Shown piece by piece: positions 2,410 to 60,906 of a stretch of 64,000 nt of DNA. The stretch's first letter is position 1. Every line of letters starts with the position of its first letter. The DNA lies in the IMG/VR virus record IMGVR_UViG_3300042261_002385, positions 372,001 to 436,000 of that record; one strand, 5' to 3'. A program made the translations under genes and the position numbers. The notes below the pieces were generated by a model. That model had not been told where the DNA came from. It ran no database searches and saw only the letters and a program-made list of their open reading frames with translations.

Positions 2410-2994
2410 ATGAAACATTTATCAACATTTAAACTATTTGAGAGATTAGATAATTCTACATTAGTTACAATAGACCAGTTACTTGAAAGAATTAGAATTC
2501 CAAATCATATGAGACCACAAATTATTAACTGGTGGAATCAAAATAGAAGTGAAATTAGAATTCATTTTTTTAGATTTAATACTACAGAACCAATTGGTGG
2601 AATAATTATGGATGAAAATACTATAGTTTTGAACGATGACTTACAAACAAGACCAATGCCTCCTCATATTAAATTATTTTTGGCACTTCACGAAAGTAGA
2701 CACTGCGACCAACACAGAATGGGAAATTCAATAACACAATATTTTGATTCTGTCGTAAGAAACGATAGACAATCATTTATGAGACATTATCAAGAATTAG
2801 AAAGTGATGCTAATGACTTTGCTATTTCATCTATGAGAGCTTGTGGTTTCGACAGACAAATGAATTTTGAAGAAAGAATGCTTAGATCAAATGAAATGGC
2901 AGGAGATATGGTTTATCAAATGATGTCAGATGACATACAGAGATTGAATCCGGTTGATTTATTTGACTTATTTAAAAAACAAATTGGAGTGTGA
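2410..2994 (+). CDS. N-tagged protein with HExxH metallopeptidase-like motif
   Basis: Start reassigned to MKHLSTFKLFE after AATATATA 2397-2404; LALHESRHCDQH plus downstream ELESDA. Confidence 0.65.
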   Translation: MKHLSTFKLFERLDNSTLVTIDQLLERIRIPNHMRPQIINWWNQNRSEIRIHFFRFNTTEPIGGIIMDENTIVLNDDLQTRPMPPHIKLFLALHESRHCDQHRMGNSITQYFDSVVRNDRQSFMRHYQELESDANDFAISSMRACGFDRQMNFEERMLRSNEMAGDMVYQMMSDDIQRLNPVDLFDLFKKQIGV

Positions 2995-3334: not shown

Positions 3335-3697
3335 GTGAAATACTTACAAACATATAAATTATTTGAATCATCTAATATAGAACAGGTAATAAAAAATATT
3401 TTACTTCCTATAAGTGATGGTCATTTTCAGTATGAGGTAAGTGTTGAAGAATATAGTTCTATTCCTCAGCTAGTCATAAGAGTTGTTTCATGGACCGATG
3501 AACCTCTACTGATAACGGATGGGATTAAAGAGGAATTTATGGGTATGAAAAATTATTTAGAATCCGAAGGTTATAATTATATTTTAGTAAAATACTGGAG
3601 ACCTAACTCGGTCTCTAGTTCCAAACCATTTGATTATTTTATAAATAATTTTGAAGGAACTATATCAAATCTACTATTTGTTGTTAAAAAAATATGA
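3335..3697 (+). CDS. N-tagged paralog-family protein (MKYLQTYKLFES)
   Basis: IKNILLPISD and YLESEG motifs shared with the 40134/51612 family. Confidence 0.7.
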   Translation: MKYLQTYKLFESSNIEQVIKNILLPISDGHFQYEVSVEEYSSIPQLVIRVVSWTDEPLLITDGIKEEFMGMKNYLESEGYNYILVKYWRPNSVSSSKPFDYFINNFEGTISNLLFVVKKI

Positions 3698-4323
3698 AAC
3701 ACTTACAAACATATAAACTATTTGAGTCAATTGAAAGTGAAATCAATTTTGATAAAATCGTTGAAGTCCTTTCAACTGAATGCTCAGAATTTTTAGATAT
3801 TTTACAACAATTTAATATTGAAGGTGTTTTCAGAGGTCATAAAATTTGGGATGAAGGAAATATAACTAAAGGATTTTGGAAGGTAACACCTTTTGAGAAA
3901 AGACTTCCAAGAGATACTAAAGCATCTATAAGTAAATTATTAGATGAAGAATTTGAAAAGAAATTTGGAATTCCTCTAAGAAGTAAAGGAATATTTGCAA
4001 GTAAAGATATATCAATTGCAGCAGATTACGGAAGACATAAAAACGAAGCCTTTTTATTTTTCCCTAAAAACGGATTTAGATATTTTTGGAATCCGGAAGT
4101 AGATGATCTTTTTACTCTTTTAAGAGACGATACCAGTTGGTATGATAAAGAGCCTGTCTTTTGGAAAACAATGGAATGGTTAGATTTTAAACAGATTGTA
4201 GGTGGATACAGAGAAGGTGGAATTCAATATGTAAAGTATCAAGAAATAACTTTTATTTGTGATGAATATTATCTACTTGACTTAGATTACTATGACCAAT
4301 TCTTAAATTACTTTATTAAATAA
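3694..4323 (+). CDS. N-tagged hypothetical protein (MKHLQTYKLFES)
   Basis: ORF track; translationally coupled start. Confidence 0.7.
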   Translation: MKHLQTYKLFESIESEINFDKIVEVLSTECSEFLDILQQFNIEGVFRGHKIWDEGNITKGFWKVTPFEKRLPRDTKASISKLLDEEFEKKFGIPLRSKGIFASKDISIAADYGRHKNEAFLFFPKNGFRYFWNPEVDDLFTLLRDDTSWYDKEPVFWKTMEWLDFKQIVGGYREGGIQYVKYQEITFICDEYYLLDLDYYDQFLNYFIK

Positions 4324-6525: not shown

Positions 6526-6927
6526 ATGAAACACTTAAAATTATTTGAAGATTATAAATATAAGGGCAACATCCGAGTTAAATTACTCGGAAACAATGAT
6601 TTGTGGTATGCTAGTAATAATGAATTTGAAATATCAAATATTAAATATACCATTCTCAGTCATAATAGTAGCAAACAAGTAATTTATGTTGCTACACTCA
6701 ATAATGCTGATGATTGTCAAGAAATTCAAATCTCTACGTTGAAGTATCACTACTTTGAGGGTGATTTAGTGATGTATTCTGAAGTAGGTTCTCATTTATG
6801 GGACAAAGAAATAGAATTATTCAAAAATTTGGGCGGTCAGTTTGGTTATTTAAACTTTTGTAAATTAGATAGTGGAACTGAAGTTGGTAAAACAGACCAT
6901 AGGAAATGGTTTGAAATAGTAGGTTAG
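6526..6927 (+). CDS. N-tagged hypothetical protein (MKHLKLFED)
   Basis: AATATATA 6495-6502; C-terminus similar to the 8570 ORF. Confidence 0.7.
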   Translation: MKHLKLFEDYKYKGNIRVKLLGNNDLWYASNNEFEISNIKYTILSHNSSKQVIYVATLNNADDCQEIQISTLKYHYFEGDLVMYSEVGSHLWDKEIELFKNLGGQFGYLNFCKLDSGTEVGKTDHRKWFEIVG

Positions 6928-6977
6928 ATGTAGAACTGAAGTTAGTAAAACAGAGCATAGGAAATGGTTTGAAATAG
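6875..6977 (+). repeat. Imperfect 45-bp direct repeat (6875-6919 / 6933-6977)
   Basis: gaactgaagtt(g/a)gtaaaacaga(c/g)cataggaaatggtttgaaatag; 2 mismatches. Confidence 0.9.
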
Positions 6978-7004
6978 ATATAATAAGAAAAAAAGATTAG
7001 TATC

Positions 7005-7247
7005 ATGAAACACTTAAATAAATTTAATGAAGGTTGGTTTTCTAAAGATGAAGAAAATGAACCAGTAGATGCGGTAAATAGTAAAATTGAAGATGCTGCT
7101 TATAGTTTAGGATCATTTGGTACTATGACTAAGCAAGCCGCTTTTATAAACGGTGCTAAATGGGCTATTCATAATTTAACAGATGACGAGATTAAATTAC
7201 TCAGAGAGAATACTGATAAAGACGACCATAGTTTCTTTGGTTTATAA
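7005..7247 (+). CDS. N-tagged hypothetical protein (MKHLNKFNE)
   Basis: ORF track; AFINGAKWA motif. Confidence 0.7.
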   Translation: MKHLNKFNEGWFSKDEENEPVDAVNSKIEDAAYSLGSFGTMTKQAAFINGAKWAIHNLTDDEIKLLRENTDKDDHSFFGL

Positions 7248-7282
7248 TAATTTAATTTAATATAATAGAGAAAAATAGGATT

Positions 7283-7888
7283 ATGAAATACTTAAAATTA
7301 TTTGAAGAATTCAAGATTGATTCAGAGCGAAGTTATAACATCGGGGATACTATTAGTGGTGTTCCAGGTAGCGATACATCTATAGTTGTTCGAATTGATG
7401 AAAGGGGAAAACCTATATCTGTTATGGCGAGATTGGATGTTCATCCTCTCTTTACTCAAAGAGATATAAAAGAACTTTATGATCTTTCTGATGCAAAGAG
7501 CATTGGTGAAATATTAAGGCTACCGGAAAATAAATTCTCAGGAAATTCCGGGTGGAGAATTCCTCTTTTGAGTGAGGTAGATATCATGAGAAAGATGTAT
7601 AAAGGTCAAATAAGTCAAAATTGGAACTTTACACGACTTGAAGAGCCTCTTTATCTATATTCTAATCATGAGTGTAGAGAATTTTGGGAAATGGATCCAA
7701 ATACTCGACTAACATATCAACTAAAAAATAAAGATAAACTAGGACTTTTAGATTTTGCAGGAGGTGGATTAGATAAATTAGGAACCATCACAAAGCAGTT
7801 TAATATTAGACTTGTATATGACCTTTATAATTATAAATATTCAGATACTCTGAAAGATTTTGTTAAAACACCAAGATTTGATAGTTAA
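7283..7888 (+). CDS. N-tagged hypothetical protein (MKYLKLFEE)
   Basis: ORF track; GWRIPLLSEV resembles the WRLPT motif of DUF1566-like domains. Confidence 0.65.
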   Translation: MKYLKLFEEFKIDSERSYNIGDTISGVPGSDTSIVVRIDERGKPISVMARLDVHPLFTQRDIKELYDLSDAKSIGEILRLPENKFSGNSGWRIPLLSEVDIMRKMYKGQISQNWNFTRLEEPLYLYSNHECREFWEMDPNTRLTYQLKNKDKLGLLDFAGGGLDKLGTITKQFNIRLVYDLYNYKYSDTLKDFVKTPRFDS

Positions 7889-7955
7889 AAAAAAGACATT
7901 TTTAAATTTTATTATTAAATTATAATATAGAGAAAAAATAGAGAAAAATAGGATT

Positions 7956-8547
7956 ATGAAATATATTAAATTATTTGAAGAATGGAGTCCTAATTTAGAG
8001 TATGATGAATCCCAGAAAGAGGAGTTGAAAATAAATTACGAAAAATACGTAATGTCCAGAGATTATATTCCTAATATGATTAGAGATTTAATTAAGAAAC
8101 ATTTGTCTGAAAAATGGCATCCAACTCCCACACTAGATATTGTGGAAGTTAAGTGGGAACCAGAACCTTTCAAAGATCTTGCGAAACAAAAGGGTATTGT
8201 CAGGAAAAAAGAATTTAATGATGTTACTTATGCAGGAAAACTTACTCTAAAATCTGATTTTGCAAATACCCCAATTAGTTATAGCACAGGTGGTAACCCA
8301 ATTTGTTGGTGGTGATTATAGAGCGATGTTAGGAGAGAGATTTGATTTAATCTTAGCCGAAGCGACTAAATTACTTGATAATGTGTTGGATTTACCATAT
8401 AAAGGCGAAATGGATGATAGTAGCCATGGACCAATTTCTTTCAGACAAGTTGATAATACCTATACACTCAAACAAGAATTTGACAGACCACATGAATATA
8501 AGGCAATTTTCGGTTTAATACTTGATAAGGTTTATTTAGAAATATAA
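7956..8547 (+). pseudogene. N-tagged gene (MKYIKLFEE) split by a frameshift near 8302
   Basis: ORFs 7956-8315 and 8260-8547 join if one T is removed from ccaaTTTgtt (..GGNPI-VGGDYR..). Confidence 0.55.
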
Positions 8548-8569
8548 AAAATAAAAAAAAGATAAGATT

Positions 8570-9121
8570 ATGAAACACTTAAAATTATTTGAAGACTTCA
8601 ATGAGTATGATTTTGACGGTGCTAAAAACAATCCTGATAGAATTGTGGTCAAATTTGCGCCAGGTGGGTATAATAAATTTTGGGATCAATATGTAAAATC
8701 AACCGGTGATTATTATAGAGGATTAGGTGAGAATTGGACTTACTTTGGTAGTTGGGAAGACTTAGAAGAAAAATTTTCTAGTAAGGGATTAAAAATGAGA
8801 GATGGTGAATATTATCTTTTATATAAGAACTATGATCCAAAGGATATTAAAGATTGGTACTCTAAGGGGAAACCTGAAGGTAAATTAGCAGCGACATTCT
8901 ATTTTCTAAAATATAGCAAAGAAGCTGGAGAAATATACATAGTCTCTGTATATGGAACTGAATATCAATATGTAGAAGCGAACAAAGAATATACAACTGA
9001 TAAACTTGAAGGATATCCACAATCTACTTATTGTCGTTTTGATAAAGGTGATGTAGCTAGATTGGTTGAGGTAGGTTCTATCGATCATAGAGGTTATTTT
9101 GAGGTCGCATCAGTATCATAA
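8570..9121 (+). CDS. N-tagged hypothetical protein (MKHLKLFED)
   Basis: Leader plus first codons identical to the 6526 gene. Confidence 0.7.
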   Translation: MKHLKLFEDFNEYDFDGAKNNPDRIVVKFAPGGYNKFWDQYVKSTGDYYRGLGENWTYFGSWEDLEEKFSSKGLKMRDGEYYLLYKNYDPKDIKDWYSKGKPEGKLAATFYFLKYSKEAGEIYIVSVYGTEYQYVEANKEYTTDKLEGYPQSTYCRFDKGDVARLVEVGSIDHRGYFEVASVS

Positions 9122-9136
9122 ATAAGATTAAAACTA

Positions 9137-9388
9137 TTATAATAACTGACTTAATTTTAACTCTCTAATTATAGGAGTTAGTAAAATTCTTTGGTCATCC
9201 GGGAGTCCAATTAAACAACTTTGTAGTAAAACCGTAAAGTGTGAAACCTGGACTTCATCTTCATAGATATAAGCATTTGATAATTCTCTTTCAATTTCTC
9301 TTAAGTTTGAGGCAAGTTCATACATCTGCTTGTCAATTGCAGTATGTTTAATGTCTTTAATAGCTGATATAACTAAACCTGCTTTCAT
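9137..9388 (-). CDS. Hypothetical protein with C-terminal tag (IRELKLSQLL)
   Basis: ORF track. Confidence 0.65.
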   Translation of the reverse strand: MKAGLVISAIKDIKHTAIDKQMYELASNLREIERELSNAYIYEDEVQVSHFTVLLQSCLIGLPDDQRILLTPIIRELKLSQLL

Positions 9389-9420
9389 AAAATAATATAT
9401 AAAAAAAATTAATATATGTT

Positions 9421-10398
9421 ATGGCAAATGATCCAAAAACAATTATAGAAGAATGGGGAGTTGATCCACTTGAAGGAGTTCAATTAAATGAAGTTCAACA
9501 AACAATAGTTGATGAGGCATTAGGAAATGCCACTTCATTCAGAAATGATAAAGTGGTAAGTGATGAACTTGAAAATAAATATTCTAGTTTATTCAGTCAA
9601 TGTGATAGTGTAATTAAATCATTGGATGAAACATCTCTTAAAAGACTTCTTAGAAATGTTTATATAAATGAAAATCCAAAGTGGCACCCTGAGAGAAACT
9701 CACTTGTTCATATTAAAATCGTTATGTCACGAGGAATTCAAACTGGAGATGATGACCTTATTCAAGCAGCACTTTATCACGACATTTCTAAATTTGATAC
9801 TGTTTCATTTAACAAACAGGGATGGCCAACATCACTTGGGCATGACAAAGCAGGAGCTGATGTTGCTATGTCAGATGGTGCAAATGAAGTAGTTGTTTAT
9901 GTTTGTGCTAAACATATGGTCATTAAGGGTTGGCAGGGAGCTTCAGAAGGTGGTGAATTAAATCCATCAACTAAGTTTAAGATATTTGCAGATGCTCCAG
10001 GAGCAGACAATAATGAAAAAGCAAAATCATTTTGGAAACTTTGTGTGTTTTCTAAAATGGATAATATGGGAAATGATTTCAACTATGAAAACTTAAGATG
10101 GGATAATCCAAACTATGATAATTGGGATGAAGAGTGTCCTTTAAGAGATCAATTTAAGAAAGCAGAACTAGTTGAGATTAAAGTGGAAAAACCAAAACCT
10201 CCTTTCTCTGCTCAAGAGATTATGGCATTTGGAGTTCAACCAGGTCCAATGATGGGTAAAGTTATTGGAGCTACTACTGGAAAAACTAGAGAAGAGGCTT
10301 TAGAAATTATTAAACAAATGACTGGTAATCCGAATTTGACTATGGAATCTAAAAGATGGATTAGGACATTTGAGAGTTTTAGAAATAAATTAAGATAG
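9421..10398 (+). CDS. HD-domain phosphohydrolase resembling the HD/tail region of CCA-adding enzymes
   Basis: WHPERNSLVH, AALYHDISK, GHDKAG, GVQPGPMMGKVI; C-terminal KRWIRTFESF. Confidence 0.7.
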   Translation: MANDPKTIIEEWGVDPLEGVQLNEVQQTIVDEALGNATSFRNDKVVSDELENKYSSLFSQCDSVIKSLDETSLKRLLRNVYINENPKWHPERNSLVHIKIVMSRGIQTGDDDLIQAALYHDISKFDTVSFNKQGWPTSLGHDKAGADVAMSDGANEVVVYVCAKHMVIKGWQGASEGGELNPSTKFKIFADAPGADNNEKAKSFWKLCVFSKMDNMGNDFNYENLRWDNPNYDNWDEECPLRDQFKKAELVEIKVEKPKPPFSAQEIMAFGVQPGPMMGKVIGATTGKTREEALEIIKQMTGNPNLTMESKRWIRTFESFRNKLR

Positions 10399-10695
10399 TA
10401 TTTCTTCTAATTTTAACTCTCTAATTTTTTGTAAGTCTAATTTCAATGTTTCAATTGATGAATACTTAAAATGTTTTCCACCGTCATAAGACCAACAATC
10501 TAAAGTTGATACAACTCTATTCCAGTCAAGTGGTTTAACTAAAACCACCTGTTGATTTTGATTATAAATAAGCTGAAAAGCATAAACACCTTCTTTTATA
10601 TAATTAAGTATTTCAGATGTTTTTTCATCGGAAAATCGTAAATTATACTTTACTTTATGGTAATTTAACTCAGCTTTTATATAAACTTCAATCAT
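10390..10695 (-). CDS. C-tagged hypothetical protein (IRELKLEEILS)
   Basis: ORF track; probable ATG at 10695. Confidence 0.65.
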   Translation of the reverse strand: MIEVYIKAELNYHKVKYNLRFSDEKTSEILNYIKEGVYAFQLIYNQNQQVVLVKPLDWNRVVSTLDCWSYDGGKHFKYSSIETLKLDLQKIRELKLEEILS

Positions 10696-10913
10696 AATCC
10701 TAAACACTTTAATTTATTATCTCTCGCTTTTGATTTAGTGGTAAATAATTCCTTTCTATAATTACCAGTGATATCTAAATCATTAACAATTGTATAATGT
10801 CCTGTAACAATTCTTAGATAAACATATTTCTTCCCTTTAGTTAGGACTTTAACTTTTTGACCATTATAAACATTTTGATATCGGTCTTTAATAGCAATTA
10901 CATAATCCTTCAT
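10692..10913 (-). CDS. C-tagged small beta-rich protein (ARDNKLKCLGL)
   Basis: LTKGKKYV motif. Confidence 0.65.
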   Translation of the reverse strand: MKDYVIAIKDRYQNVYNGQKVKVLTKGKKYVYLRIVTGHYTIVNDLDITGNYRKELFTTKSKARDNKLKCLGL

Positions 10914-10946: not shown

Positions 10947-11192
10947 CTACAGAAATATCTCATCTAACATTTTTTGCCTCCAAACATCTAAAGTAACAAA
11001 GTTCTTTGTTGGAAACCAATCCATCTTACTAAATCCTTCTAAGTTTAAGTAATTTTTATCCCATTCTACAGCATCGAAAAAAACAAGACTTGCTTCATAT
11101 ACTTTACCATATTCTAATGGCTCTTCTAATTTTAGAATTGGATCTCCACTTAACTTATTTGTAAAGTTAGCATCTATACAAACTACTTTCAT
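10947..11192 (-). CDS. C-tagged small beta-rich protein (WRQKMLDEIFL)
   Basis: MKVVCID..LEYGKVYE pattern. Confidence 0.65.
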   Translation of the reverse strand: MKVVCIDANFTNKLSGDPILKLEEPLEYGKVYEASLVFFDAVEWDKNYLNLEGFSKMDWFPTKNFVTLDVWRQKMLDEIFL

Positions 11193-11710
11193 ATTCCTAA
11201 ATCATCTAATTTACTATCTCTTAAAAACTCTTTGATAAGTAAGTTCAATTCATATTTTCCATCAACACAATCTCTTTCTAGAATCTTAATTGGTCTAATT
11301 TCTATTGTGTGAGTTCTATCAATTCTTTTATCAGAACCCCAATCGGATAACTGTGAATTTTTATTTTTGGATAGAATATCAAAAGTCATAAGTCTAATTG
11401 ACCTCATCTTTTTTGATGTAACTATTTTTGTTTTAAAGTAATCCGATTTCTCAAAAGTAATCTCAACTATGAAGTGAAACTTATCAGTGACTTCTGATAA
11501 GTTTGATGGCATAGTTTTATAAAACTGAGGCTGTTCAATATGAGAATAAGTAATGACTCCGCCACTTTCTGAAACTGCGACATCATCAATTGTGAAAAAA
11601 TCATCACTGGTCATTTCGAAAAAATTCTTTTGCTCAGGAAGCCAACTTAAAAAGATTAGACTTTTAGTTTCCTTATTAAATGAGTTTGATATATTGTAGT
11701 CAATTTTCAT
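11189..11710 (-). CDS. C-tagged hypothetical protein (LRDSKLDDLGI)
   Basis: ORF track. Confidence 0.7.
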   Translation of the reverse strand: MKIDYNISNSFNKETKSLIFLSWLPEQKNFFEMTSDDFFTIDDVAVSESGGVITYSHIEQPQFYKTMPSNLSEVTDKFHFIVEITFEKSDYFKTKIVTSKKMRSIRLMTFDILSKNKNSQLSDWGSDKRIDRTHTIEIRPIKILERDCVDGKYELNLLIKEFLRDSKLDDLGI

Positions 11711-24822: not shown

Positions 24823-25020
24823 ATGGTTGTTATATGCAGAGATAATAAAGACTATGAAAGGTTCCTAAAAATTGGCGAGAAGTATTTCGTTATAGAAATT
24901 CTTTGTCAAGAAAACCAATTTTGGTATAGAATTGAAGGATTGAATACTATTTTCAGCTACTTTCGATTCTACCCAGTAGACCTTATTAGACAACAAAAGA
25001 TTGAAGATTTAGGTATCTAA
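24823..25020 (+). CDS. C-tagged small beta-rich protein (IRQQKIEDLGI)
   Basis: MVVIC..LKIGEKYFV pattern. Confidence 0.65.
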   Translation: MVVICRDNKDYERFLKIGEKYFVIEILCQENQFWYRIEGLNTIFSYFRFYPVDLIRQQKIEDLGI

Positions 25021-26080: not shown

Positions 26081-26395
26081 ATGATGTCAGAAAAAAATGA
26101 ATTAAATGTAGTTCAGAGTCACATTAATAAAATATACGAACTTTTTAAATCACAATCAAAACTAAATTATGTCACTCCATCTATACCAGGTCAACAAATT
26201 GTCGACTATCTTCAAATAGACAAGTCAGAGTATTACCACTTCTTTAATTTGATGTGCTATGAACTAAAAGTGCTTTCTATAAATCCAGGAACAGATGAAG
26301 TGTCTTATCATTGGCAGGAAAATGATTATGGATTACTAGAACCACTCAGAACTCAACTTGAAAGAGATATTAAAATTGATGAACTAGGTATATGA
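26081..26395 (+). CDS. C-tagged hypothetical protein (ERDIKIDELGI)
   Basis: ORF track; probable ATG at 26081. Confidence 0.65.
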   Translation: MMSEKNELNVVQSHINKIYELFKSQSKLNYVTPSIPGQQIVDYLQIDKSEYYHFFNLMCYELKVLSINPGTDEVSYHWQENDYGLLEPLRTQLERDIKIDELGI

Positions 26396-40133: not shown

Positions 40134-40553
40134 ATGAAAAGAATTAAATCATTCATTTTGTTTGAGACATTTGATGAACAAGATGACGTCTATCAAATTA
40201 CCACTACTGTAAAAGAAATGTTATTAGAGTTAGACTTCTTAGATATTGAAAAAAGAGTTGATATTGTTAAAAATCATTCTAAATTACAAATTGATGAATC
40301 CCCTGAGATTATTGTAATTAATCTATGGAAGAAGGCAATTAAAAAAGAAGACTATGGATTTAGAGCTTCTTATCATTGGAATGATGTTAAAGATGTTATA
40401 GTGCCAGTTATTGATTATTTAGAAGCGGAAGGATTTACTTGGCAAATGGATAGGGGAACGCTTGCTTATAATGGAGTTCCTATTATATCTACATCAGGTA
40501 GTCAGCAATTCGATACTGTTAGGAGTAAAGTAGAAATGTGGTTTATAAGATGA
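40134..40553 (+). CDS. N-tagged paralog-family protein (MKRIKSFILFE)
   Basis: Close paralog of 51612. Confidence 0.72.
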   Translation: MKRIKSFILFETFDEQDDVYQITTTVKEMLLELDFLDIEKRVDIVKNHSKLQIDESPEIIVINLWKKAIKKEDYGFRASYHWNDVKDVIVPVIDYLEAEGFTWQMDRGTLAYNGVPIISTSGSQQFDTVRSKVEMWFIR

Positions 40554-40969
40554 GAAAGATTAAGTCATTTAAGTTATTTGAAAGTGATTATCTACCACTA
40601 AATTTTGATTATACACAGTATGATGAAGACCATAAATTCATTTCAGATACACTTTTAGATTTAGAAGACATAGGATATAAAATCAAAATCTCACCAGATG
40701 GAATTTCTAGTCATATAGGAATTAATGAAGAAATGCCATTCTTTATAATTGATAATAAAAAATACTTTAAATTTTCTGATGTTAAAGAACAACTTCTTCA
40801 AATTAAATCTTACTTAGATGATAGATGGTTTAAGTGTGGTGTTCTTTTTGAAGGTGATCCTAAAAGACTAGAAGTTTATATAGATGAAAAAGATTATGAC
40901 TATTTAGATGATTGGTTTCAAACATCAACTACAGCAATCGTAAATTTAGCAGTCTATTTTAATATATAG
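40550..40969 (+). CDS. N-tagged paralog-family protein (MRKIKSFKLFE)
   Basis: ISDTLLDLEDIG motif. Confidence 0.72.
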   Translation: MRKIKSFKLFESDYLPLNFDYTQYDEDHKFISDTLLDLEDIGYKIKISPDGISSHIGINEEMPFFIIDNKKYFKFSDVKEQLLQIKSYLDDRWFKCGVLFEGDPKRLEVYIDEKDYDYLDDWFQTSTTAIVNLAVYFNI

Positions 40970-41467: not shown

Positions 41468-41944
41468 ATGAAAAGAATAAAGACATTTAAACTATTTGAA
41501 TCAGTATCCGAACAAATTATAAGAGACATACTCTTAGATCTAACTGATGATAGTAATTTCAATGTTAATATCAAAAAGGTAGATTATCATTTAGAAGTTG
41601 TTATAACGAGGGGTTCTTATTTAGATTCAAGAAAAACAAGAGAGATTCCAGGAGCACCTGAAGCACCAGGTGGATATCCAAATAATTTATTTTTATGGTT
41701 TGAAATCAAAGATGTTATTATAAGATTATGTGAGTATGTTTATTCAGAAACTGAATTAAAACCAATTGAGAATAGACATTTTCAACAATGGTATTTACAG
41801 GCAGAACATTTTTCAAAATCACCATTTAGAATGAAAAATCTTGGTATTGGAAGTGAGTTTGGTATAGGATGGCACAAAGCAGAAGATTTTACTTTAGGTG
41901 ATTTTATTTCTTTTACTGGATTAAAATTAATAATTAAATTGTGA
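41468..41944 (+). CDS. N-tagged paralog-family protein (MKRIKTFKLFE)
   Basis: IRDILLDLTDD motif. Confidence 0.7.
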   Translation: MKRIKTFKLFESVSEQIIRDILLDLTDDSNFNVNIKKVDYHLEVVITRGSYLDSRKTREIPGAPEAPGGYPNNLFLWFEIKDVIIRLCEYVYSETELKPIENRHFQQWYLQAEHFSKSPFRMKNLGIGSEFGIGWHKAEDFTLGDFISFTGLKLIIKL

Positions 41945-43513: not shown

Positions 43514-43750
43514 ATGAAACATATTAAAAATTATAGATTGTTTGAATCAGCTGGTCCAGAAGAAGCTTGGAGAGAATTATTCAAAAATTGGGATGGTAAA
43601 AGTCCGAATGCTCCATGGCACTATCAATATGATGAGTTCAAAAAAGAGCTTCAAGCAGAAGGTAAATGGAAACCTGAATGGGATAAGAGTTTTAACTCTT
43701 CACGAGACCAAGCACAAGAAGATTATCTTACACATTTTAACAGACATTAA
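43514..43750 (+). CDS. N-tagged hypothetical protein (MKHIKNYRLFES)
   Basis: AATATATA 43482; terminator at about 43757-43784. Confidence 0.7.
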   Translation: MKHIKNYRLFESAGPEEAWRELFKNWDGKSPNAPWHYQYDEFKKELQAEGKWKPEWDKSFNSSRDQAQEDYLTHFNRH

Positions 43751-44907: not shown

Positions 44908-45171
44908 ATGATAGTATTCAATACAATAAAGAAAGCAGAACACTGGTTAAAGTGGTATTCTAAACATAACGATTATCATAGAGATGGTTATGATTGGGAA
45001 TCTGTTTCAACTTATATTGATGGAAATCTTGTTGTAACTCGTCACCAAGGTGATGGTTGTGGGTGTGGATGTGACGACCATCATTTTGATTTCATCACAG
45101 TTCATGGTAGAATTAAAAAATTCGATACTAAATCTATTCGTGGTGAAAAGATAAATGACTTAGGTGTATGA
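44908..45171 (+). CDS. C-tagged hypothetical protein (IRGEKINDLGV)
   Basis: GCGCGC motif. Confidence 0.65.
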   Translation: MIVFNTIKKAEHWLKWYSKHNDYHRDGYDWESVSTYIDGNLVVTRHQGDGCGCGCDDHHFDFITVHGRIKKFDTKSIRGEKINDLGV

Positions 45172-45371
45172 TAGTTAAATGTAAATCAGATAATGACTCT
45201 GTTGGTAAACTTAAAGGCTTGACTATTGATAAATCATATACAGTTACTGGTATTGATAAAATAGGGTATAGAATAGTTGATAATGAATTTAGAAACTATT
45301 GGTATACAAAAGAATTGTTTTATCCGATAGATGAAGAAAGAAATAAAAAATTAAATGCCTTAGGAATATGA
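45168..45371 (+). CDS. C-tagged small beta-rich protein (ERNKKLNALGI)
   Basis: MIVKC..LTIDKSYTV..YRIVD pattern. Confidence 0.65.
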   Translation: MIVKCKSDNDSVGKLKGLTIDKSYTVTGIDKIGYRIVDNEFRNYWYTKELFYPIDEERNKKLNALGI

Positions 45372-46723: not shown

Positions 46724-47041
46724 ATGAAATGTTATAAGCTAGTCGATAACACACCAGTTAAATGTGAATTAGATGAGATAGATATGAAGGATAAAACTCT
46801 TTGGTATGATGATTTCTCAGGAGTTCAAGTTTCTACTGTATTCTTAGTTTGGGACCATTCATTCGGAAATGGAGCACAACCAGTTCTTTTTGAAACAATG
46901 GTGTTTGGTGGCGTCTATAATGACTATCAAATCAGATATAATACTTATGAAGAAGCCGAAGCAGGTCATAAAGAAACGTGTTATATGGTTAATAAAATAT
47001 CTGATGATAGACAAAAAAAATTAGATGATTTAGGTATCTAA
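46724..47041 (+). CDS. C-tagged phage protein (DRQKKLDDLGI)
   Basis: VSTVFL..PVLFETMVFGG..RYNTYEEAEAGH phage hypothetical motif. Confidence 0.7.
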   Translation: MKCYKLVDNTPVKCELDEIDMKDKTLWYDDFSGVQVSTVFLVWDHSFGNGAQPVLFETMVFGGVYNDYQIRYNTYEEAEAGHKETCYMVNKISDDRQKKLDDLGI

Positions 47042-51611: not shown

Positions 51612-52001
51612 GTGAAAAAGATTAAATCATTTAGTTTATTTGAGTCAGTTGATGATGCATTAGACATTTTACCTGTTGTAAAGGATATGTTATTAGAGTT
51701 AAGTGATTTAGATTATATTACTAATTGTGTAGTAAGAAGAATGGATGGTTGTGAGTATATTAGAATAGGAATTTCTAAGCCAGTTGTGATTGGAGATAGA
51801 TATGATGTTAAGGCATCATTCGAGTGGATTGATATAAAAGATATTATGGATACTATTATAGAGTATTTAAAATCCGAAGGGTATCATTATCAAGTGGATA
51901 AGGGAACCCTATCTTGGAGTGGTCATCCTATTGTGGTCACTTCTGGAAATGCCTTTGAAGGTATTAAATCAAGATGTGAAATGTGGTTTGAAAAGAGATG
52001 A
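51612..52001 (+). CDS. N-tagged paralog-family protein (MKKIKSFSLFES)
   Basis: AATATATA 51597; paralog of 40134. Confidence 0.72.
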   Translation: MKKIKSFSLFESVDDALDILPVVKDMLLELSDLDYITNCVVRRMDGCEYIRIGISKPVVIGDRYDVKASFEWIDIKDIMDTIIEYLKSEGYHYQVDKGTLSWSGHPIVVTSGNAFEGIKSRCEMWFEKR

Positions 52002-52513
52002 AGAGGTTAAAATCATTTAAGTTATTTAATGAATCAAAAGATTATAATTTATCTACTATAAAGGATATGTTATTAGATTTTACTGATAAGGATATTGATG
52101 TTGATGTCAGTGAAGGTTCTTGGATTTTAGATAATGGGGAAGTTGAATATGTTAAGATAAAGATTGGAAAATTTAATGGACCTCTTTTTAGTATAGAAAG
52201 GTGTTTATTAGATGTTATAGATTATTTAGAAGAATCTGGGTTTGTTATGATGGATGAGTCTTGGTATTGGAATGATTCTTGGCAGCATTACGTTGGGTGT
52301 CCTAATTGTTTATCAGATGATTTTGAGGACAATTATGGTTTACGTGGAGCAACTCGTTGTAATAAGTGTGAGTATATCGGGCCTCCTGATAGTTTTTTAC
52401 AAGACCAGTGGTCAGTTACAAGATATGATTTGGCAAAGGATATTAAGGGTAGGCAGGTTGAACAAATAGAGTTACTTTTCAGTGATAGAAGGAGTAAGTT
52501 CGGTGGTGGGTAA
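51998..52513 (+). CDS. N-tagged paralog-family protein with inserted Zn ribbon
   Basis: MKRLKSFKLFNE; IKDMLLDFTD; CPNC..CNKC. Confidence 0.7.
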   Translation: MKRLKSFKLFNESKDYNLSTIKDMLLDFTDKDIDVDVSEGSWILDNGEVEYVKIKIGKFNGPLFSIERCLLDVIDYLEESGFVMMDESWYWNDSWQHYVGCPNCLSDDFEDNYGLRGATRCNKCEYIGPPDSFLQDQWSVTRYDLAKDIKGRQVEQIELLFSDRRSKFGGG

Positions 52514-57193: not shown

Positions 57194-57772
57194 TCAAAAA
57201 GGTGAAAGTTTATGACGTGAGGGGTTTAAATTTTTACCACTTCCTGCTACAGCGGACAAGCATTTCCAACATATCGCAGCTGCGAAAGTAATAATAGCTC
57301 CGGCTAAAACACCAATACCTAATCCAGTTCCTAATAAAGCAAGTAAAGTAACGATGGCTCCTCCAATAGTGATTGCTGCTGAACTTAACCAACCTATCAT
57401 TTTCAAGAATTCAACTGCACTCATACCTAAAATTTCTTCAGTAATTAACGTATAGTTTTCTTTTAATACCGGTTGTAATTTTTTCTCGTCAGTTGGTGGA
57501 ACATAATTTTTTAATTTTTCATAACAATCTTTTATGTCTTCTATACCAACTTTTTCGGATACTATTTTACAAGCAGCATTGAATTTATCGGCATATTTCT
57601 CCATTACCTCTTTAGCCTTCTCCATACCTTCGCGGTAAGATCCTGTTAGTTTATCCCAGAGGTTTTTAAGACTATTTTTTAGTGAGTCCCACCACTCACC
57701 CAATCTGCTAAATAATCCTTCTTCTTCATTAATGGAATAAGAAAAACTTTCGAATGATTTGACGTATTTCAT
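57194..57772 (-). CDS. N-tagged protein with C-terminal hydrophobic hairpin
   Basis: MKYVKSFESF; about 45-aa hydrophobic stretch; AATATATA (-) 57791. Confidence 0.7.
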   Translation of the reverse strand: MKYVKSFESFSYSINEEEGLFSRLGEWWDSLKNSLKNLWDKLTGSYREGMEKAKEVMEKYADKFNAACKIVSEKVGIEDIKDCYEKLKNYVPPTDEKKLQPVLKENYTLITEEILGMSAVEFLKMIGWLSSAAITIGGAIVTLLALLGTGLGIGVLAGAIITFAAAICWKCLSAVAGSGKNLNPSRHKLSPF

Positions 57773-59256: not shown

Positions 59257-60906
59257 TTAAATTTTAGTTACGAGATTTTCTACAATTTGGAGACCTCTTA
59301 TTATTTTTGAATAATAATCATTTACTCTCCAATTTCTCAAATATTGACAAGCTCTTTCACCAGTATCTTGACCTAAATAATCTATGAAATTTGATAAATT
59401 ATCTAAACCGTAAGTGCTATTAGAAAAGAAGTTTGATAGACTTATCATTTTTTGACGAGCTATTTCTAAATCTTCTATGGTATTAAATTCACCAGACATT
59501 AGTCTTGTATAGAACTTTTGACTTATTCTTTCTAAACTTTCAACAATTGGTAAATATTTGTTTTCAGTTTCTTCACTGTCGGATTTTAGAATTTTTTTAA
59601 CAGTTTCTAAATTTTTAGTGATTCTAGTAGTTCTTTCAGCTGCTCTTTTGTAAAGGTCTTTGATTCTATTATTAATTTGATTAATGCAGTATTCTTTATT
59701 ACTTTCGTCTTCAGTAGACATCATATCATAATAAAGTTCTGATATTGATCCAAAATAGTTTTGATATCTTGAAGCTGATTCTAAGACAAACATTGACCAT
59801 CTACCACCAACTCCTCTAGATACTAAATTTTTGATATTAGACACATCGCCTATGATGTCAGCTTTAAGTGCAATTTGAGTAAGATATCTTTCAATATTTT
59901 GTTTTCTAACATCATCATCACTAACTACTAATCTGCTGCCAGATTTAAGTTCTTCTCTTTCATCTTTTATTTCACTTCTACGTTGATACTCACCCGACTT
60001 TAATTTATTTAAGTCTAACACTAAGGCAAAATGAGCATCTTTTATAGTAGATTCTACATTTGTTCCAGTATATGATTTAAAGTATTGGTTTAGTCCAACA
60101 TTCCACTCGTAAGGATCTACGGCATCTTTATCATCATCATCATCACCTTCTTCTTTTTCTTTAAGAACACAAATTCTGTTAAAATCTCCACCAGATACAT
60201 TCCAAGAGTATCTTCCATAACTTCTCCAAGCACTACCATTTGGTGATCCACCGTCGAACCTGTCTTGAATACAGAATACTTCTCCACCACTTTGAAAAAT
60301 CGTTGCAATTACATCTGGATCTCTATCATGTGCTGCAATTGTAACTTTTGTCAAGTGTGGTAGACTACGGAGAGTTCTTACTCCATTTGAATCAGGTAAC
60401 AGGGTAGATACTACTTTATATTTTTGCAAAGATTTTGATTTAGATGCTACGCTTCTAAGAACTCCATCAACTCCAGTTTGTGTGATGAATTTACCATCTG
60501 ATGAAAACCAGAATTTAATTATTTTTACCTCTGGTTGTTGTGGTTCTTTTCCAGATCCATCACAATGGGGACAATCAACGATTCTAGTTCTTTGACCCCA
60601 CATACGTGCTAATTTACCTGATTTACAAACCTCACCTTCAACACCGTGTTGTCTGAATGCGGTTTTAGAAGTCATTTTACAAGGTTCATCTTTAGGTTCA
60701 AATTTAACATTTAGTGCCTTTTTGAAAGGTAAGTATTCAAACATATCATCTGAAAACTGAGATAGTGGAAAATCGTAACTGCGAGCTAATTTTTCGAGTG
60801 TATTAATGAATCTTTGTTTAGATTCAGAATTTATATATCCTAAAATTTTAGTTAATTTAACTGATTCAAATGCTTCGAAAAGTTTGAGATATTTTAATTG
60901 TCTCAT
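59257..60906 (-). CDS. Large N-tagged hypothetical protein (MRQLKYLKLFEAFE)
   Basis: Zn-ribbon-like CPHCDGSG; helical C-half. Confidence 0.75.
   Translation of the reverse strand: MRQLKYLKLFEAFESVKLTKILGYINSESKQRFINTLEKLARSYDFPLSQFSDDMFEYLPFKKALNVKFEPKDEPCKMTSKTAFRQHGVEGEVCKSGKLARMWGQRTRIVDCPHCDGSGKEPQQPEVKIIKFWFSSDGKFITQTGVDGVLRSVASKSKSLQKYKVVSTLLPDSNGVRTLRSLPHLTKVTIAAHDRDPDVIATIFQSGGEVFCIQDRFDGGSPNGSAWRSYGRYSWNVSGGDFNRICVLKEKEEGDDDDDKDAVDPYEWNVGLNQYFKSYTGTNVESTIKDAHFALVLDLNKLKSGEYQRRSEIKDEREELKSGSRLVVSDDDVRKQNIERYLTQIALKADIIGDVSNIKNLVSRGVGGRWSMFVLESASRYQNYFGSISELYYDMMSTEDESNKEYCINQINNRIKDLYKRAAERTTRITKNLETVKKILKSDSEETENKYLPIVESLERISQKFYTRLMSGEFNTIEDLEIARQKMISLSNFFSNSTYGLDNLSNFIDYLGQDTGERACQYLRNWRVNDYYSKIIRGLQIVENLVTKI

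What the first reader, a model, noticed from the sequence alone, without database searches (positions are those of the whole stretch)
9421..10398. HD phosphohydrolase with the N-type tag at its C-terminus
Seen: the gene follows AATATATA but has no N-tag; instead it ends ..TMESKRWIRTFESFRNKLR, matching the tag (compare MKYVKSFESF, MKHVKTFEGF) and preceded by an E-S site. The body resembles the HD and tail parts of CCA-adding enzymes without the nucleotidyltransferase head. Inference: the tag may work independently of position, and the cargo could act on RNA ends or nucleotide signals (possible anti-defence role).
Basis: inference. Interest (0 to 1): 0.62.

Follow-up and report, generated by a model that had tools for sequence, protein, structure and literature searches.

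The report
Phage HD enzyme with C-terminal address tag
A giant freshwater phage puts the same 11-residue peptide that begins at least 45 of its unrelated proteins onto the far end of a conserved RNA-end/nucleotide phosphoesterase, which shows the peptide is a portable protein tag that works wherever it sits and that also serves as a joint where gene modules are swapped.

Summary
ORF 9421-10398 (+) encodes 325 aa, has no N-tag, and ends ...TMESKRWIRTFESFRNKLR.

- **Match to the tag:** on a profile built from 30 N-tags of the same 436-kb phage genome, the tail scores 25.2 bits. True tags have a median of 22.2 bits. Chance is 2e-9 per window, and this is the best non-N-terminal hit in the proteome.
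- **Conservation:** 113 of 120 orthologs (down to 45% identity) keep the tail. Its pN/pS is 0.36, against 0.39 for the whole gene and 1.3 just after the tag.
- **Structure:** AlphaFold places it on a disordered linker outside the fold.
- **Module junction:** in about 23 orthologs the tag is internal and is followed by one of six unrelated 100-138 aa modules. The same modules also occur as stand-alone N-tagged genes. One pair of contigs differs by a 543-bp deletion between two 24-nt tag-coding repeats.
- **The enzyme:** it has an intact HD site, is closest to the HD region of CCA-adding/repair enzymes, and has a CCA-enzyme-like tail domain but no nucleotidyltransferase head.
- **A second case:** a DHH phosphoesterase family also ends in ..IAKFESFNNSKL.

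What the tag binds is not shown. Capsid loading, as with the T4 capsid targeting sequence, is my leading inference. The anti-defence role is untested.

The parts
9394..9418 (+). Promoter-like motifs AATATATA (9394-9401) and TTAATATATG (9409-9418) in the 32-nt divergent intergenic gap
   Evidence: Read directly. AATATATA occurs within 70 nt upstream of 21/45 N-tagged ORFs and 129/528 of all ORFs, including the head protease. It looks like a general phage promoter element and does not mark a class.
9421..10398 (+). HD phosphoesterase gene, 325 aa, stop TAG at 10396-10398
   Evidence: 120 homologs at 43-96% identity. AlphaFold2 mean pLDDT 90.3.
9658..10080 (+). HD catalytic core (residues 80-220); invariant H89, H97, H120-D121, H141-D142, H165, D214
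   Evidence: Invariant columns in the 55-sequence alignment. HDIG E 1.7e-5 and NF008137 (Cca) E 2.4e-5. PhnZ Z 10.7, 3wfo Z 9.6. pN/pS 0.28.
10186..10326 (+). Three-helix tail domain (residues 256-302), similar to the C-terminal tail of class II CCA/A-adding enzymes
   Evidence: phmmer/hmmsearch against 3wfo residues 444-507. Helices 264-269, 276-285, 290-301.
10327..10350 (+). Flexible linker (residues 303-310, NPNLTMES) containing the conserved Glu (E309)
   Evidence: pLDDT below 50 at residues 310-314. Length varies among orthologs. pN/pS 0.58. A Glu lies 3-9 residues before the Trp in 113/113 orthologs.
10351..10383 (+). C-terminal copy of the tag: K311 R W I R T F E S F R321
   Evidence: 25.2 bits on the N-tag PSSM, P 2e-9. 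W 103/113, F 104/113, E 106/113, F 111/113 conserved. pN/pS 0.36 with pS 0.57.
10384..10395 (+). Unconstrained 4-residue stub (NKLR) after the tag; in long-form orthologs a 100-138 aa module starts here
   Evidence: pN/pS 1.3. Long forms.
6526..9121 (+). Upstream same-strand array of N-tagged genes (6526-6927, 7005-7247, 7283-7888, 7956-8315, 8570-9121)
   Evidence: The HD gene sits at the end of this array, after one short minus-strand gene (9137-9388).
10390..10707 (-). Convergent downstream gene whose stop overlaps the last 9 nt of the HD gene; ends ..IRELKLEEILS (the other, C-terminal recurring motif)
   Evidence: The same neighbour is found in orthologous loci L004, L006, L007, L035.

Best explanation
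The gene encodes an active metal-dependent HD phosphoesterase. Its catalytic domain is of the kind fused to CCA-adding/repair enzymes, and it keeps their small C-terminal tail domain but has no nucleotidyltransferase head. The most likely substrate class is 2',3'-cyclic or 3'-phosphate ends of tRNA/RNA, or cyclic nucleotides.

A disordered linker follows the fold. After it comes an 11-residue amphipathic peptide (K-[KR]-W-[IV]-K-T-F-E-S-F-R). This is the same short linear motif that forms the first 10-11 residues of at least 45 otherwise unrelated proteins of this 436-kb Mahaphage-clade phage.

The motif is a portable protein-level tag read independently of position. It occurs at the N-terminus of small cargo proteins, at the C-terminus of larger enzymes whose N-terminus is part of the fold (this HD enzyme and, in a related form, a DHH phosphoesterase), and between modules in multi-module proteins.

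My leading inference is that the tag docks its carrier onto the assembling prohead core, so that the enzyme is packaged and delivered with the DNA into the next cell. A gp21-type head protease, which is present, would then trim at a Glu in or next to the tag. Precedents are the T4 capsid targeting sequence and encapsulin targeting peptides.

Separately, and shown directly, the tag-coding DNA acts as a short homology patch at which downstream modules are deleted, fused and exchanged in frame.

Shown: identity of the tail with the tag, its conservation and purifying selection, its flexibility, the module junctions, one recombination event, and the intact HD site. Inferred: what the tag binds, proteolytic trimming, packaging, and substrate.
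For: - Tag identity: 25.2 bits against a true-tag median of 22.2; P 2.1e-9 per window.
- Only the tag is shared: the 45 N-tagged ORFs fall into 44 blastp singleton groups once the first 14 residues are removed.
- Conservation: the motif is present in 113/120 orthologs down to about 45% identity. pN/pS is 0.36 in the tag with synonymous sites near saturation (pS 0.57), against 0.58 in the linker and 1.3 after the tag. The tail has its own lineage-specific consensus (W3, T6, R11), so it is not being copied from neighbouring N-tags.
- Flexibility: AlphaFold2 pLDDT is 90 for the body and below 50 for residues 310-314, with a short low-confidence helix at 317-324.
- Junction role: 23 orthologs carry 100-138 aa extensions of six unrelated kinds right after the tag. 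The same module stands alone behind an N-tag in P0124 and P0125. L018 has a two-module protein with an internal KYLKTFESF before the module that is fused to HD in L023.
- Recombination: L029 equals L028 (99% identity) minus 543 bp, with the breakpoints inside a 24-nt direct repeat encoding ESFRKNK.
- Second C-terminal case: all but 3 of the 120 listed orthologs of a 741-aa DHH/DHHA1 enzyme end ..[VI][IV]AKFExF... The window genome's copy scores 14.9 bits, with 0.014 expected in C-terminal zones.
- Capsid plausibility: the genome has a portal, a major capsid protein and a 699-aa head maturation protease (phrog_207 E 1e-30, Peptidase_S77-like). The protease carries about ten 14-residue YSEYIAENLDKNIA repeats that look like a scaffold. 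Two small N-tagged ORFs lie just downstream of the capsid gene on the same strand.
- T4 precedent: its internal proteins use a 10-residue tag in which residues 4 and 7 drive targeting, and T4 Alt and gp21 also have C-terminal propeptides (PMC9026906).
- Encapsulin precedent: the same targeting motif is used at the C- or N-terminus (PMC8346489).
- Enzyme: invariant H/HD/H/H/D residues; NF008137 E 2.4e-5 and HDIG E 1.7e-5. A distant relative, P0290, is a true PolyA_pol-head enzyme matched in its HD region at E 2.6e-14.
Against: - There is no direct evidence that any tagged protein is in a virion. No cultured relative carries the tag: 0 pattern hits in LR756501.1, Lak-B5, pT24 and MA9V-2.
- The T4 CTS has no profile similarity to this tag (-10 to -14 bits).
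- About 45 carriers (around 9% of genes) is far more than T4's handful, and the carriers are mostly acidic (median pI 5.7) rather than basic like the T4 internal proteins.
- The Glu contexts (L-T-M-E, K-T-F-E) do not fit the T4 L/I-x-E cleavage rule consistently.
- The shared upstream motif also precedes a quarter of all genes, so co-expression with head genes is not shown.
- The HD assignment is below Pfam and NCBIfam cut-offs, and PhnZ-type oxygenases match the fold at least as well, so the substrate is open.
- The DHH tail is modelled, at low confidence, as a beta hairpin rather than a free helix.
Confidence: 0.5

Rival explanations
1. The tag is a docking motif for some hub other than the capsid. 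It would bring many phage proteins, this HD enzyme included, to a host or phage machine or compartment such as the replisome clamp, RNA polymerase, ribosome, a chaperone or protease, or a membrane site.
For: Everything that shows a position-independent, conserved short linear motif fits this equally well. Carriers are numerous (45) and mostly acidic, unlike the T4 internal proteins. The F-[DE]-x-F core on a flexible terminal tail is the general form of clamp- and hub-binding peptides (my own knowledge; not tested here). Nothing here ties the tag to the capsid specifically.
Against: No replication or transcription protein of the genome appears among the high-scoring internal or C-terminal hits. 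Carriers sit in hypervariable cassette arrays, and none of the about 30 scanned has a clear Pfam or PHROG function apart from one DUF5824 match. That is the pattern of accessory or injected arsenals rather than core-machine subunits. Two carriers lie inside the head gene cluster.
Confidence: 0.3
2. The tail is an evolutionary scar. It would be the 5' end of a once-adjacent N-tagged gene that became fused in frame to the HD gene and was then truncated, with no function in the HD protein.
For: Long forms show that such fusions do happen, and a tag-to-tag deletion was caught directly. The residue before the tag region is often Met (TMES), as if it were an old start codon. The HD gene sits at the edge of an N-tag gene array.
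Against: The tail is kept in 113/120 orthologs across the whole family, including the deepest branches. pN/pS is 0.36 with saturated synonymous change, whereas the four residues after it evolve neutrally at 1.3. It has its own stable consensus. A second enzyme family independently keeps a similar tail. One lineage (L036-L038, KRWIKSIAQWK) does show partial decay, so loss is possible but rare.
Confidence: 0.08
3. The conserved element works at the nucleic-acid level only, as an A/T-rich translation-start region or a recombination site. On this reading the peptide itself is irrelevant.
For: Tag codons are A/T-rich. Recombination at tag DNA is shown. N-terminal codons are known to affect expression (general knowledge).
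Against: Amino acids are conserved while synonymous sites are nearly saturated. Substitutions are conservative at the protein level (K/R, F/Y, H/Y/W, I/L/V). The copy in the HD gene lies 930 nt from the start codon, where no initiation occurs.
Confidence: 0.05

Closest known systems
Capsid targeting sequence (CTS) of phage T4 internal proteins IPI/IPII/IPIII (MKTYQEFIAE), with gp21 processing
   Same: A roughly 10-residue peptide starting M-K with an aromatic at position 7, shared by otherwise unrelated and fast-evolving small proteins. T4 residues 4 and 7 drive targeting (PMC9026906), and positions 4 and 7 are among the most conserved here. A gp21/S77-type head protease is present. T4 Alt and gp21 also have C-terminal propeptides.
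   Different: No sequence relationship: the T4 CTS scores -10 to -14 bits on the tag profile. Here there are at least 45 carriers, the tag also occurs at C-termini and between modules, the carriers are acidic, and no packaging or cleavage has been observed.
Encapsulin targeting / cargo-loading peptides
   Same: A short linear peptide on a flexible linker, usually at the C-terminus of an enzyme and in some cargo at the N-terminus. It loads diverse enzymes into an HK97-fold shell (PMC8346489).
   Different: A different motif (TVGSL-like), and a cellular nanocompartment rather than a virion. Binding of this tag to the capsid protein was not tested.
Multifunctional CCA-adding/repair enzyme Cca (NF008137) and the Aquifex aeolicus A-adding enzyme (PDB 3wfo)
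   Same: The HD region aligns to Cca profile positions 203-349 (E 2.4e-5). Both the HD segment and the C-terminal tail segment align to 3wfo (Z 9.6). The E. coli Cca HD domain is known to have 2',3'-cyclic phosphodiesterase, 2'-nucleotidase and phosphatase activities (my own knowledge).
   Different: There is no nucleotidyltransferase head or neck in the protein or anywhere in the genome. It has an extra 70-residue N-terminal region, a C-terminal tag, and scores far below family cut-offs.
PhnZ / TmpB HD-domain mixed-valent diiron oxygenases
   Same: Best structural match to the HD core (Z 10.7 and 8.9). It has the same count of His/Asp ligand positions.
   Different: Only marginal sequence similarity (E 0.04). 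No phosphonate context, and the extra tail domain points to a nucleic-acid substrate.
Polymorphic toxin cassettes (CdiA VENN, Rhs PxxxxDPxGL junctions)
   Same: A short conserved peptide marks the border between a constant part and swappable C-terminal modules. Its coding DNA serves as the recombination site, and stand-alone 'orphan' modules lie downstream (general knowledge; compare).
   Different: Here the junction peptide also heads dozens of stand-alone genes. The modules show no toxin or immunity pairing, and the constant part is a small enzyme.

Membership tests
HD-domain metal-dependent phosphohydrolase superfamily (PF01966 / TIGR00277) | H...HD...D metal-binding residues | tested here: met
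   H97, H120-D121 and D214 (plus H89, H141-D142, H165) are invariant in 55 sequences.
HD-domain metal-dependent phosphohydrolase superfamily (PF01966 / TIGR00277) | Score above the curated family cut-off | tested here: not met
   Pfam HD 15.2 bits against a cut-off of 22. HDIG 24.6 against 27.6. Distant relatives found with the family profile do pass the Pfam HD cut-off.
HD-domain metal-dependent phosphohydrolase superfamily (PF01966 / TIGR00277) | All-helical HD fold | tested here: met
   pLDDT 90 model. PhnZ Z 10.7 (rmsd 2.7, 137 aligned residues), 3wfo Z 9.6, and many HD proteins at Z 5-7.
Multifunctional CCA-adding/repair enzyme (Cca, class II nucleotidyltransferase) | N-terminal PolyA_pol nucleotidyltransferase head | tested here: not met
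   No PF01743 match in the protein or in the whole 436-kb genome.
Multifunctional CCA-adding/repair enzyme (Cca, class II nucleotidyltransferase) | Cca-type HD domain | tested here: inconclusive
   NF008137 E 2.4e-5 but 23 bits against a cut-off of 451. The profile hits the HD region of a PolyA_pol-head protein at E 2.6e-14.
Multifunctional CCA-adding/repair enzyme (Cca, class II nucleotidyltransferase) | C-terminal tRNA-binding tail domain | tested here: inconclusive
   Residues 251-305 align to 3wfo 444-507 with a domain E of about 4-10 only. tRNA binding cannot be tested here.
T4-type capsid targeting sequence | Sequence similarity to MKTYQEFIAE | tested here: not met
   T4 IPII/IPIII N-termini score -14.3 and -10.3 bits on the tag PSSM.
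T4-type capsid targeting sequence | Short N-terminal peptide shared by unrelated cargo proteins | tested here: met
   45 ORFs, 44 unrelated groups. In the HD enzyme itself, however, the peptide is C-terminal.
T4-type capsid targeting sequence | gp21-type prohead protease in the genome | tested here: met
   269288-271387 (-): phrog_207 E 1.3e-30. Peptidase_S77 E 1.5e-5, below cut-off.
T4-type capsid targeting sequence | Carrier is packaged in the head and the tag is cleaved off | not testable with these tools
   No virion proteome exists for this clade. The complex prediction of the tag against the protease repeat domain gave no verdict.
Encapsulin-type targeting peptide | Terminal peptide on a disordered linker outside the cargo fold | tested here: met
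   pLDDT below 50 at 310-314 and 57-65 for 306-325.
Encapsulin-type targeting peptide | Binds the inner face of an HK97-fold shell protein | not tested
   The major capsid protein was identified (267436-269208, phrog_138), but no binding test was run.

The most novel reading that the evidence does not exclude
A clade of huge freshwater Bacteroidetes phages uses one 10-11 residue peptide as a universal, position-independent loading tag. It would send more than 45 unrelated proteins into the capsid for delivery with the DNA, among them pre-made nucleotide and RNA-end phosphoesterases (HD, DHH, and possibly a Nudix hydrolase and a P-loop kinase). The tag's coding sequence doubles as the recombination joint that shuffles cargo modules, giving a self-diversifying injected arsenal much larger than any described for T4-like or phiKZ-like phages.
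Probability: 0.3. Interest if true: 0.85.

Novelty: new variant of a known kind. Interest (0 to 1): 0.68.

Why it matters
Tags that load proteins into capsids are known from T4 and encapsulins. They are thought of as end-specific and as serving a few proteins. Here a single peptide heads about 9% of the genes of a 436-kb phage. This HD enzyme shows that the peptide works equally at a C-terminus or between domains.

That gives three things. It is a simple sequence rule for finding the tagged proteome in uncultured huge phages. It is a natural example of how cargo modules are exchanged, through recombination at the tag. It is also a candidate tool for packaging foreign proteins.

If the carriers are injected, the tagged HD and DHH phosphoesterases would be candidates for enzymes that act at the first moment of infection, on damaged tRNA ends or on cyclic-nucleotide alarm signals.

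Tried and rejected
- **PHROGs on the HD protein:** no family.
- **tblastn against 50,697 phage records:** one partial 33% hit in LR756500.1.
- **Foldseek against PDB:** nothing at E <= 0.001. The top weak rows were 3wfo and PhnZ.
- **Viral-contig scan with the family alignment:** no confirmed locus. The metagenome scan then gave 46 loci.
- **Extension modules against the window genome's proteome:** no blastp hit.
- **Promoter test:** AATATATA is only 1.9-fold enriched before N-tagged genes and also precedes a quarter of all genes, including the protease. It cannot assign a temporal class.
- **T4 CTS scored on the tag profile:** negative, so homology to the T4 CTS is rejected.
- **Complex prediction:** HD residues 286-325 against the protease repeat domain 215-470 returned no verdict (score 0.00, controls not run). 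This is neither evidence for nor against binding.
- **phiKZ_IP hit:** a faint Pfam hit (PF12699, E 0.009) on the N-tagged protein at 57197-57772 (-) was not reproduced in its two paralogs and sits among noise-level hits. It is rejected as evidence.
- **Family scans of about 30 N-tagged proteins (Pfam; 20 of them also PHROGs):** almost nothing. The hits were DUF5824, a weak CPT-like P-loop and a weak Nudix match.
- **Literature search for the motif strings:** no paper.
- **Sequencing runs:** no RNA run holds the locus.
- **Clamp-binding reading:** considered because of the F-[DE]-x-F core. No replication protein carries the motif.
- **Internal start at M308 making an 18-residue peptide:** rejected, because Met is replaced by Leu, Val or Ile in many orthologs.
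Full report
**What is there.**
The ORF at 9421-10398 (+) encodes 325 residues. It begins MANDPKTIIEEW, so it has no N-tag, and it ends ...GNPNLTMESKRWIRTFESFRNKLR. The 32-nt gap upstream holds AATATATA (9394-9401) and TTAATATATG (9409-9418).

The window is the last 64 kb of a single 436,265-bp virus record with 31.5% G+C and 28 tRNA genes. The genome has a portal, a major capsid protein and a head maturation protease. Its capsid protein is 70% identical to that of the 642-kb uncultured phage LR756502.1 and 51% identical to that of the 735-kb LR756501.1. These genomes belong to the Mahaphage clade, predicted to infect Bacteroidetes (PMC7162821). Near-identical DNA of the locus occurs in lake, reservoir and drinking-water metagenomes of 13 studies.

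**Is the tail really the tag?**
Forty-five ORFs of the genome start with M-[KR]-x-[ILV]-[KR]-x-[FY]-[ED]-x-[FWY] or the variant MKxLKSFKLFES. Once the first 14 residues are removed, they form 44 unrelated blastp groups. The shared peptide is therefore a portable element, not the conserved head of a paralog family.

I built a position matrix from 30 of these N-termini. It gives the tail KRWIRTFESFR 25.2 bits, above the leave-one-out median of true tags (22.2 bits). This is the best of 128,728 non-N-terminal windows; the only higher hits are N-tags with mis-called starts, and the next real hit scores 15.4. The exact null probability is 2.1e-9 per window.

**Is it conserved?**
A word-index search gave 120 homologs at 43-96% identity. 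Of these, 113 carry the motif, and the other seven are mostly fragments. The consensus is K-[KR]-W-[IV]-K-T-F-E-S-F-R, with Phe at the last aromatic position in 111 of 113.

On codon alignments of 29 metagenomic loci, pN/pS values were:

| Region | pN/pS |
|---|---|
| Tag (pS 0.57, near saturation) | 0.36 |
| Whole gene | 0.39 |
| HD core | 0.28 |
| Linker | 0.58 |
| Four residues after the tag | 1.3 |

The tail keeps its own flavour (Trp at position 3, Thr at 6, Arg at 11). It is therefore maintained by selection on the peptide rather than copied from neighbouring N-tags.

**Structure.**
AlphaFold2 on a 55-sequence alignment gives mean pLDDT 90.3. Confidence collapses after residue 305: it is below 50 at residues 310-314, and a short low-confidence helix spans 317-324. 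The tag is a flexible appendage, as expected for a short linear motif.

**The tag as a module junction.**
In 23 homologs the motif is internal and is followed by 100-138 further residues of six mutually unrelated kinds. Several observations tie these modules to stand-alone tagged genes.
- One module also exists as a stand-alone protein that starts with an N-tag (P0124, MKYLKQFENF...; P0125 after start correction).
- In L028 the module that L029 has fused to the HD gene forms the C-terminal part of the separate, N-tagged gene just downstream.
- L029 is L028 (99% identity on both sides) minus 543 bp. The breakpoints lie in a 24-nt direct repeat that encodes ESFRKNK, the second half of the tag.
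- In L018 the gene downstream of HD is itself a two-module protein. It has an internal KYLKTFESF before the module that L023 has fused to HD.
- Many loci have N-tagged genes directly after the HD gene. In the window an array of five such genes lies just upstream.

Tag-coding DNA is therefore a demonstrated site of in-frame module exchange, and the tag peptide sits at the front of each module.

**A second C-terminal case.**
The only other strong C-terminal hit in the genome is a 741-residue protein at G000:348480-350705, outside the window. It has invariant DHH and GGGH motifs. All but three of its 120 listed orthologs (47-98% identity over the C-terminal region searched, on contigs up to 630 kb) end NK[KR][VI]IAKFE[SNK]FNNSK. 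The score is 14.9 bits, with 0.014 expected in C-terminal zones. Its model is poor at that end, showing a possible beta hairpin with pLDDT around 50, so I treat this as supportive rather than proven.

**The enzyme.**
Pfam HD and TIGR HDIG hits are below cut-off. Even so, H89, H97, H120-D121, H141-D142, H165 and D214 are invariant. The fold matches these HD proteins:

| Match | Z-score |
|---|---|
| PhnZ | 10.7 |
| A. aeolicus CCA-family enzyme 3wfo | 9.6 |
| TmpB | 8.9 |

The best named sequence match is the HD region of the multifunctional CCA addition/repair protein (NF008137 positions 203-349, E 2.4e-5). Residues 251-305 align weakly to the C-terminal tail of 3wfo.

A full-library profile search shows the complete architecture is confined to this phage clade, with 9 representatives at E < 1e-30. 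More distant relatives match only the HD core, and one of them has a PolyA_pol head. Neither the protein nor the genome has a nucleotidyltransferase head. The protein is therefore not a CCA-adding enzyme. It is a stand-alone 'HD plus tail' relative.

By homology, the likeliest chemistry is removal of 2',3'-cyclic or 3'-phosphates from tRNA/RNA ends, or hydrolysis of cyclic nucleotides. An Rnl2-type RNA ligase gene (161397-162035, at the Pfam cut-off) and 28 tRNA genes make an RNA-repair role plausible. This is inference only.

**What the tag does.**
This is the weak link. The best precedent is the T4 capsid targeting sequence (MKTYQEFIAE, verified).
- It is a 10-residue N-terminal peptide shared by unrelated, fast-evolving internal proteins.
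- Residues 4 and 7 drive targeting to the scaffold core, and the gp21 protease trims after Glu.
- T4 Alt and gp21 also have C-terminal propeptides (PMC9026906; PMC5694885).
- Encapsulins use one targeting motif at the C- or N-terminus (PMC8346489).

This phage has a gp21-type protease. Its middle part consists of about ten 14-residue repeats, YSEYIAENLDKNIA. This is a scaffold-like domain rich in I-A-E, the same tripeptide that ends the T4 CTS and starts T4 gp22. Two small N-tagged ORFs lie just downstream of the capsid gene.

Several points count against pressing the analogy.
- The T4 CTS has no profile similarity to this tag.
- There are 45 carriers, and they are acidic.
- The Glu contexts do not follow L/I-x-E.
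- The shared promoter-like motif is not class-specific.
- The tag pattern is absent from every cultured relative checked, so no virion proteome bears on it.
- A complex prediction of the tail with the repeat domain gave no verdict.

I therefore put about 0.85 on 'the tail is a functional, position-independent copy of the tag'. I put about 0.35-0.4 on 'the tag loads proteins into the prohead', and about 0.3 on some other docking partner.

**Cargo hints.**
Most tagged proteins match no family. The few hints are as follows:
- a CPT-like P-loop kinase with an intact Walker A motif (157350-158213);
- a Nudix-like protein (351792-352370);
- DUF5824 (314474-315178);
- the C-terminally tagged HD and DHH phosphoesterases.

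A bias toward nucleotide and phosphate chemistry is suggestive but rests on weak matches.

**Novelty.**
No paper in the searchable library contains the motif strings, and the family has no annotation. In kind it is closest to known capsid or compartment targeting peptides and to junction motifs of polymorphic cassettes. The new elements are its scale, its use at either end and between modules, and the direct link between tag and module shuffling.

**Verdict.**
The virion and anti-defence roles remain untested.

Noticed in passing
window 10390-10707(-), 10692-10913(-), 11189-11710(-), 24823-25020(+), 26081-26395(+), 45168-45371(+), 46724-47041(+) and many more: A second recurring terminal motif, this one at C-termini. 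Dozens of small ORFs end ..[LI]R[DE]xK[LI]xx[LI]G[IL] (e.g. IRELKLEEILS, RDNKLKCLGL, ERDIKIDELGI). Orthologous loci from other metagenomes show the same thing. Function unknown.
   Followed up: no
G000:348480-350705 (+), outside the window (locus L066): A 741-aa DHH/DHHA1 phosphoesterase (invariant DHH 140-142, GGGH 606-609). All but 3 of its 120 listed orthologs end ..NK[KR][VI]IAKFE[SNK]FNNSK, a tag-like FESF tail at the extreme C-terminus.
   Followed up: partly
G000:269288-271387 (-), outside the window (locus L068): The head maturation protease is 699 aa. Residues about 285-440 form roughly ten tandem 14-residue repeats, YSEYIAENLDKNIA (42-bp DNA period, 9.6 copies), followed by an acidic His-rich stretch. 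It looks like a protease-scaffold fusion. The repeat resembles the T4 CTS and the gp22 N-terminus in its ..[FY]IAE core.
   Followed up: partly
window 2410-2994, 3694-4323, 40134-40553, 40550-40969, 41468-41944, 43514-43750, 51998-52513 (all +): A variant of the N-tag with three extra residues (MK[HR][LI]K[ST][FY]KLFES), as if the K-x-F unit were duplicated. It always contains L-F-E. These ORFs tend to cluster.
   Followed up: no
window 59257-60906 (-) and 60903-62567 (-): Two adjacent ORFs of 549 and 554 aa. The first carries the tag three residues in from its start (MRQLKYLKLFEAF; 25.3 bits). G000:77294-78919 (541 aa, MRYLKFYEAF) is a similarly large carrier of the tag. No family match for the two that were scanned.
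   Followed up: no
G000:157350-158213 (-), 351792-352370 (+), 161397-162035 (-), outside the window: N-tagged proteins with weak enzyme hints: a CPT-like P-loop kinase (Walker A GTSSSGKS) and a Nudix-like protein. An Rnl2-type RNA ligase (PF09414, 27.4 bits, at cut-off) lies next to a tRNA-Cys gene. Together with the HD enzyme, this could be an RNA-repair set.
   Followed up: partly
loci L028 (5063-5086 and 5630-5653) and L029 (2444-2467): Two natural variants from different samples of one study differ by a precise 543-bp deletion between 24-nt direct repeats encoding ESFRKNK. The deletion swaps which module is fused behind the HD tag.
   Followed up: yes
G000:37118-37204 (-), outside the window: ARAGORN reports a tRNA-like gene with a four-base anticodon (agta) next to a tRNA-Met, among 28 tRNA genes.
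   Followed up: no
loci L036, L037, L038: In one HD lineage (about 51% identity) the tail has drifted to KRWIKSIAQWK. The W-I-K half is kept and the F-E-x-F half is lost, while N-tagged genes persist next door.
   Followed up: no
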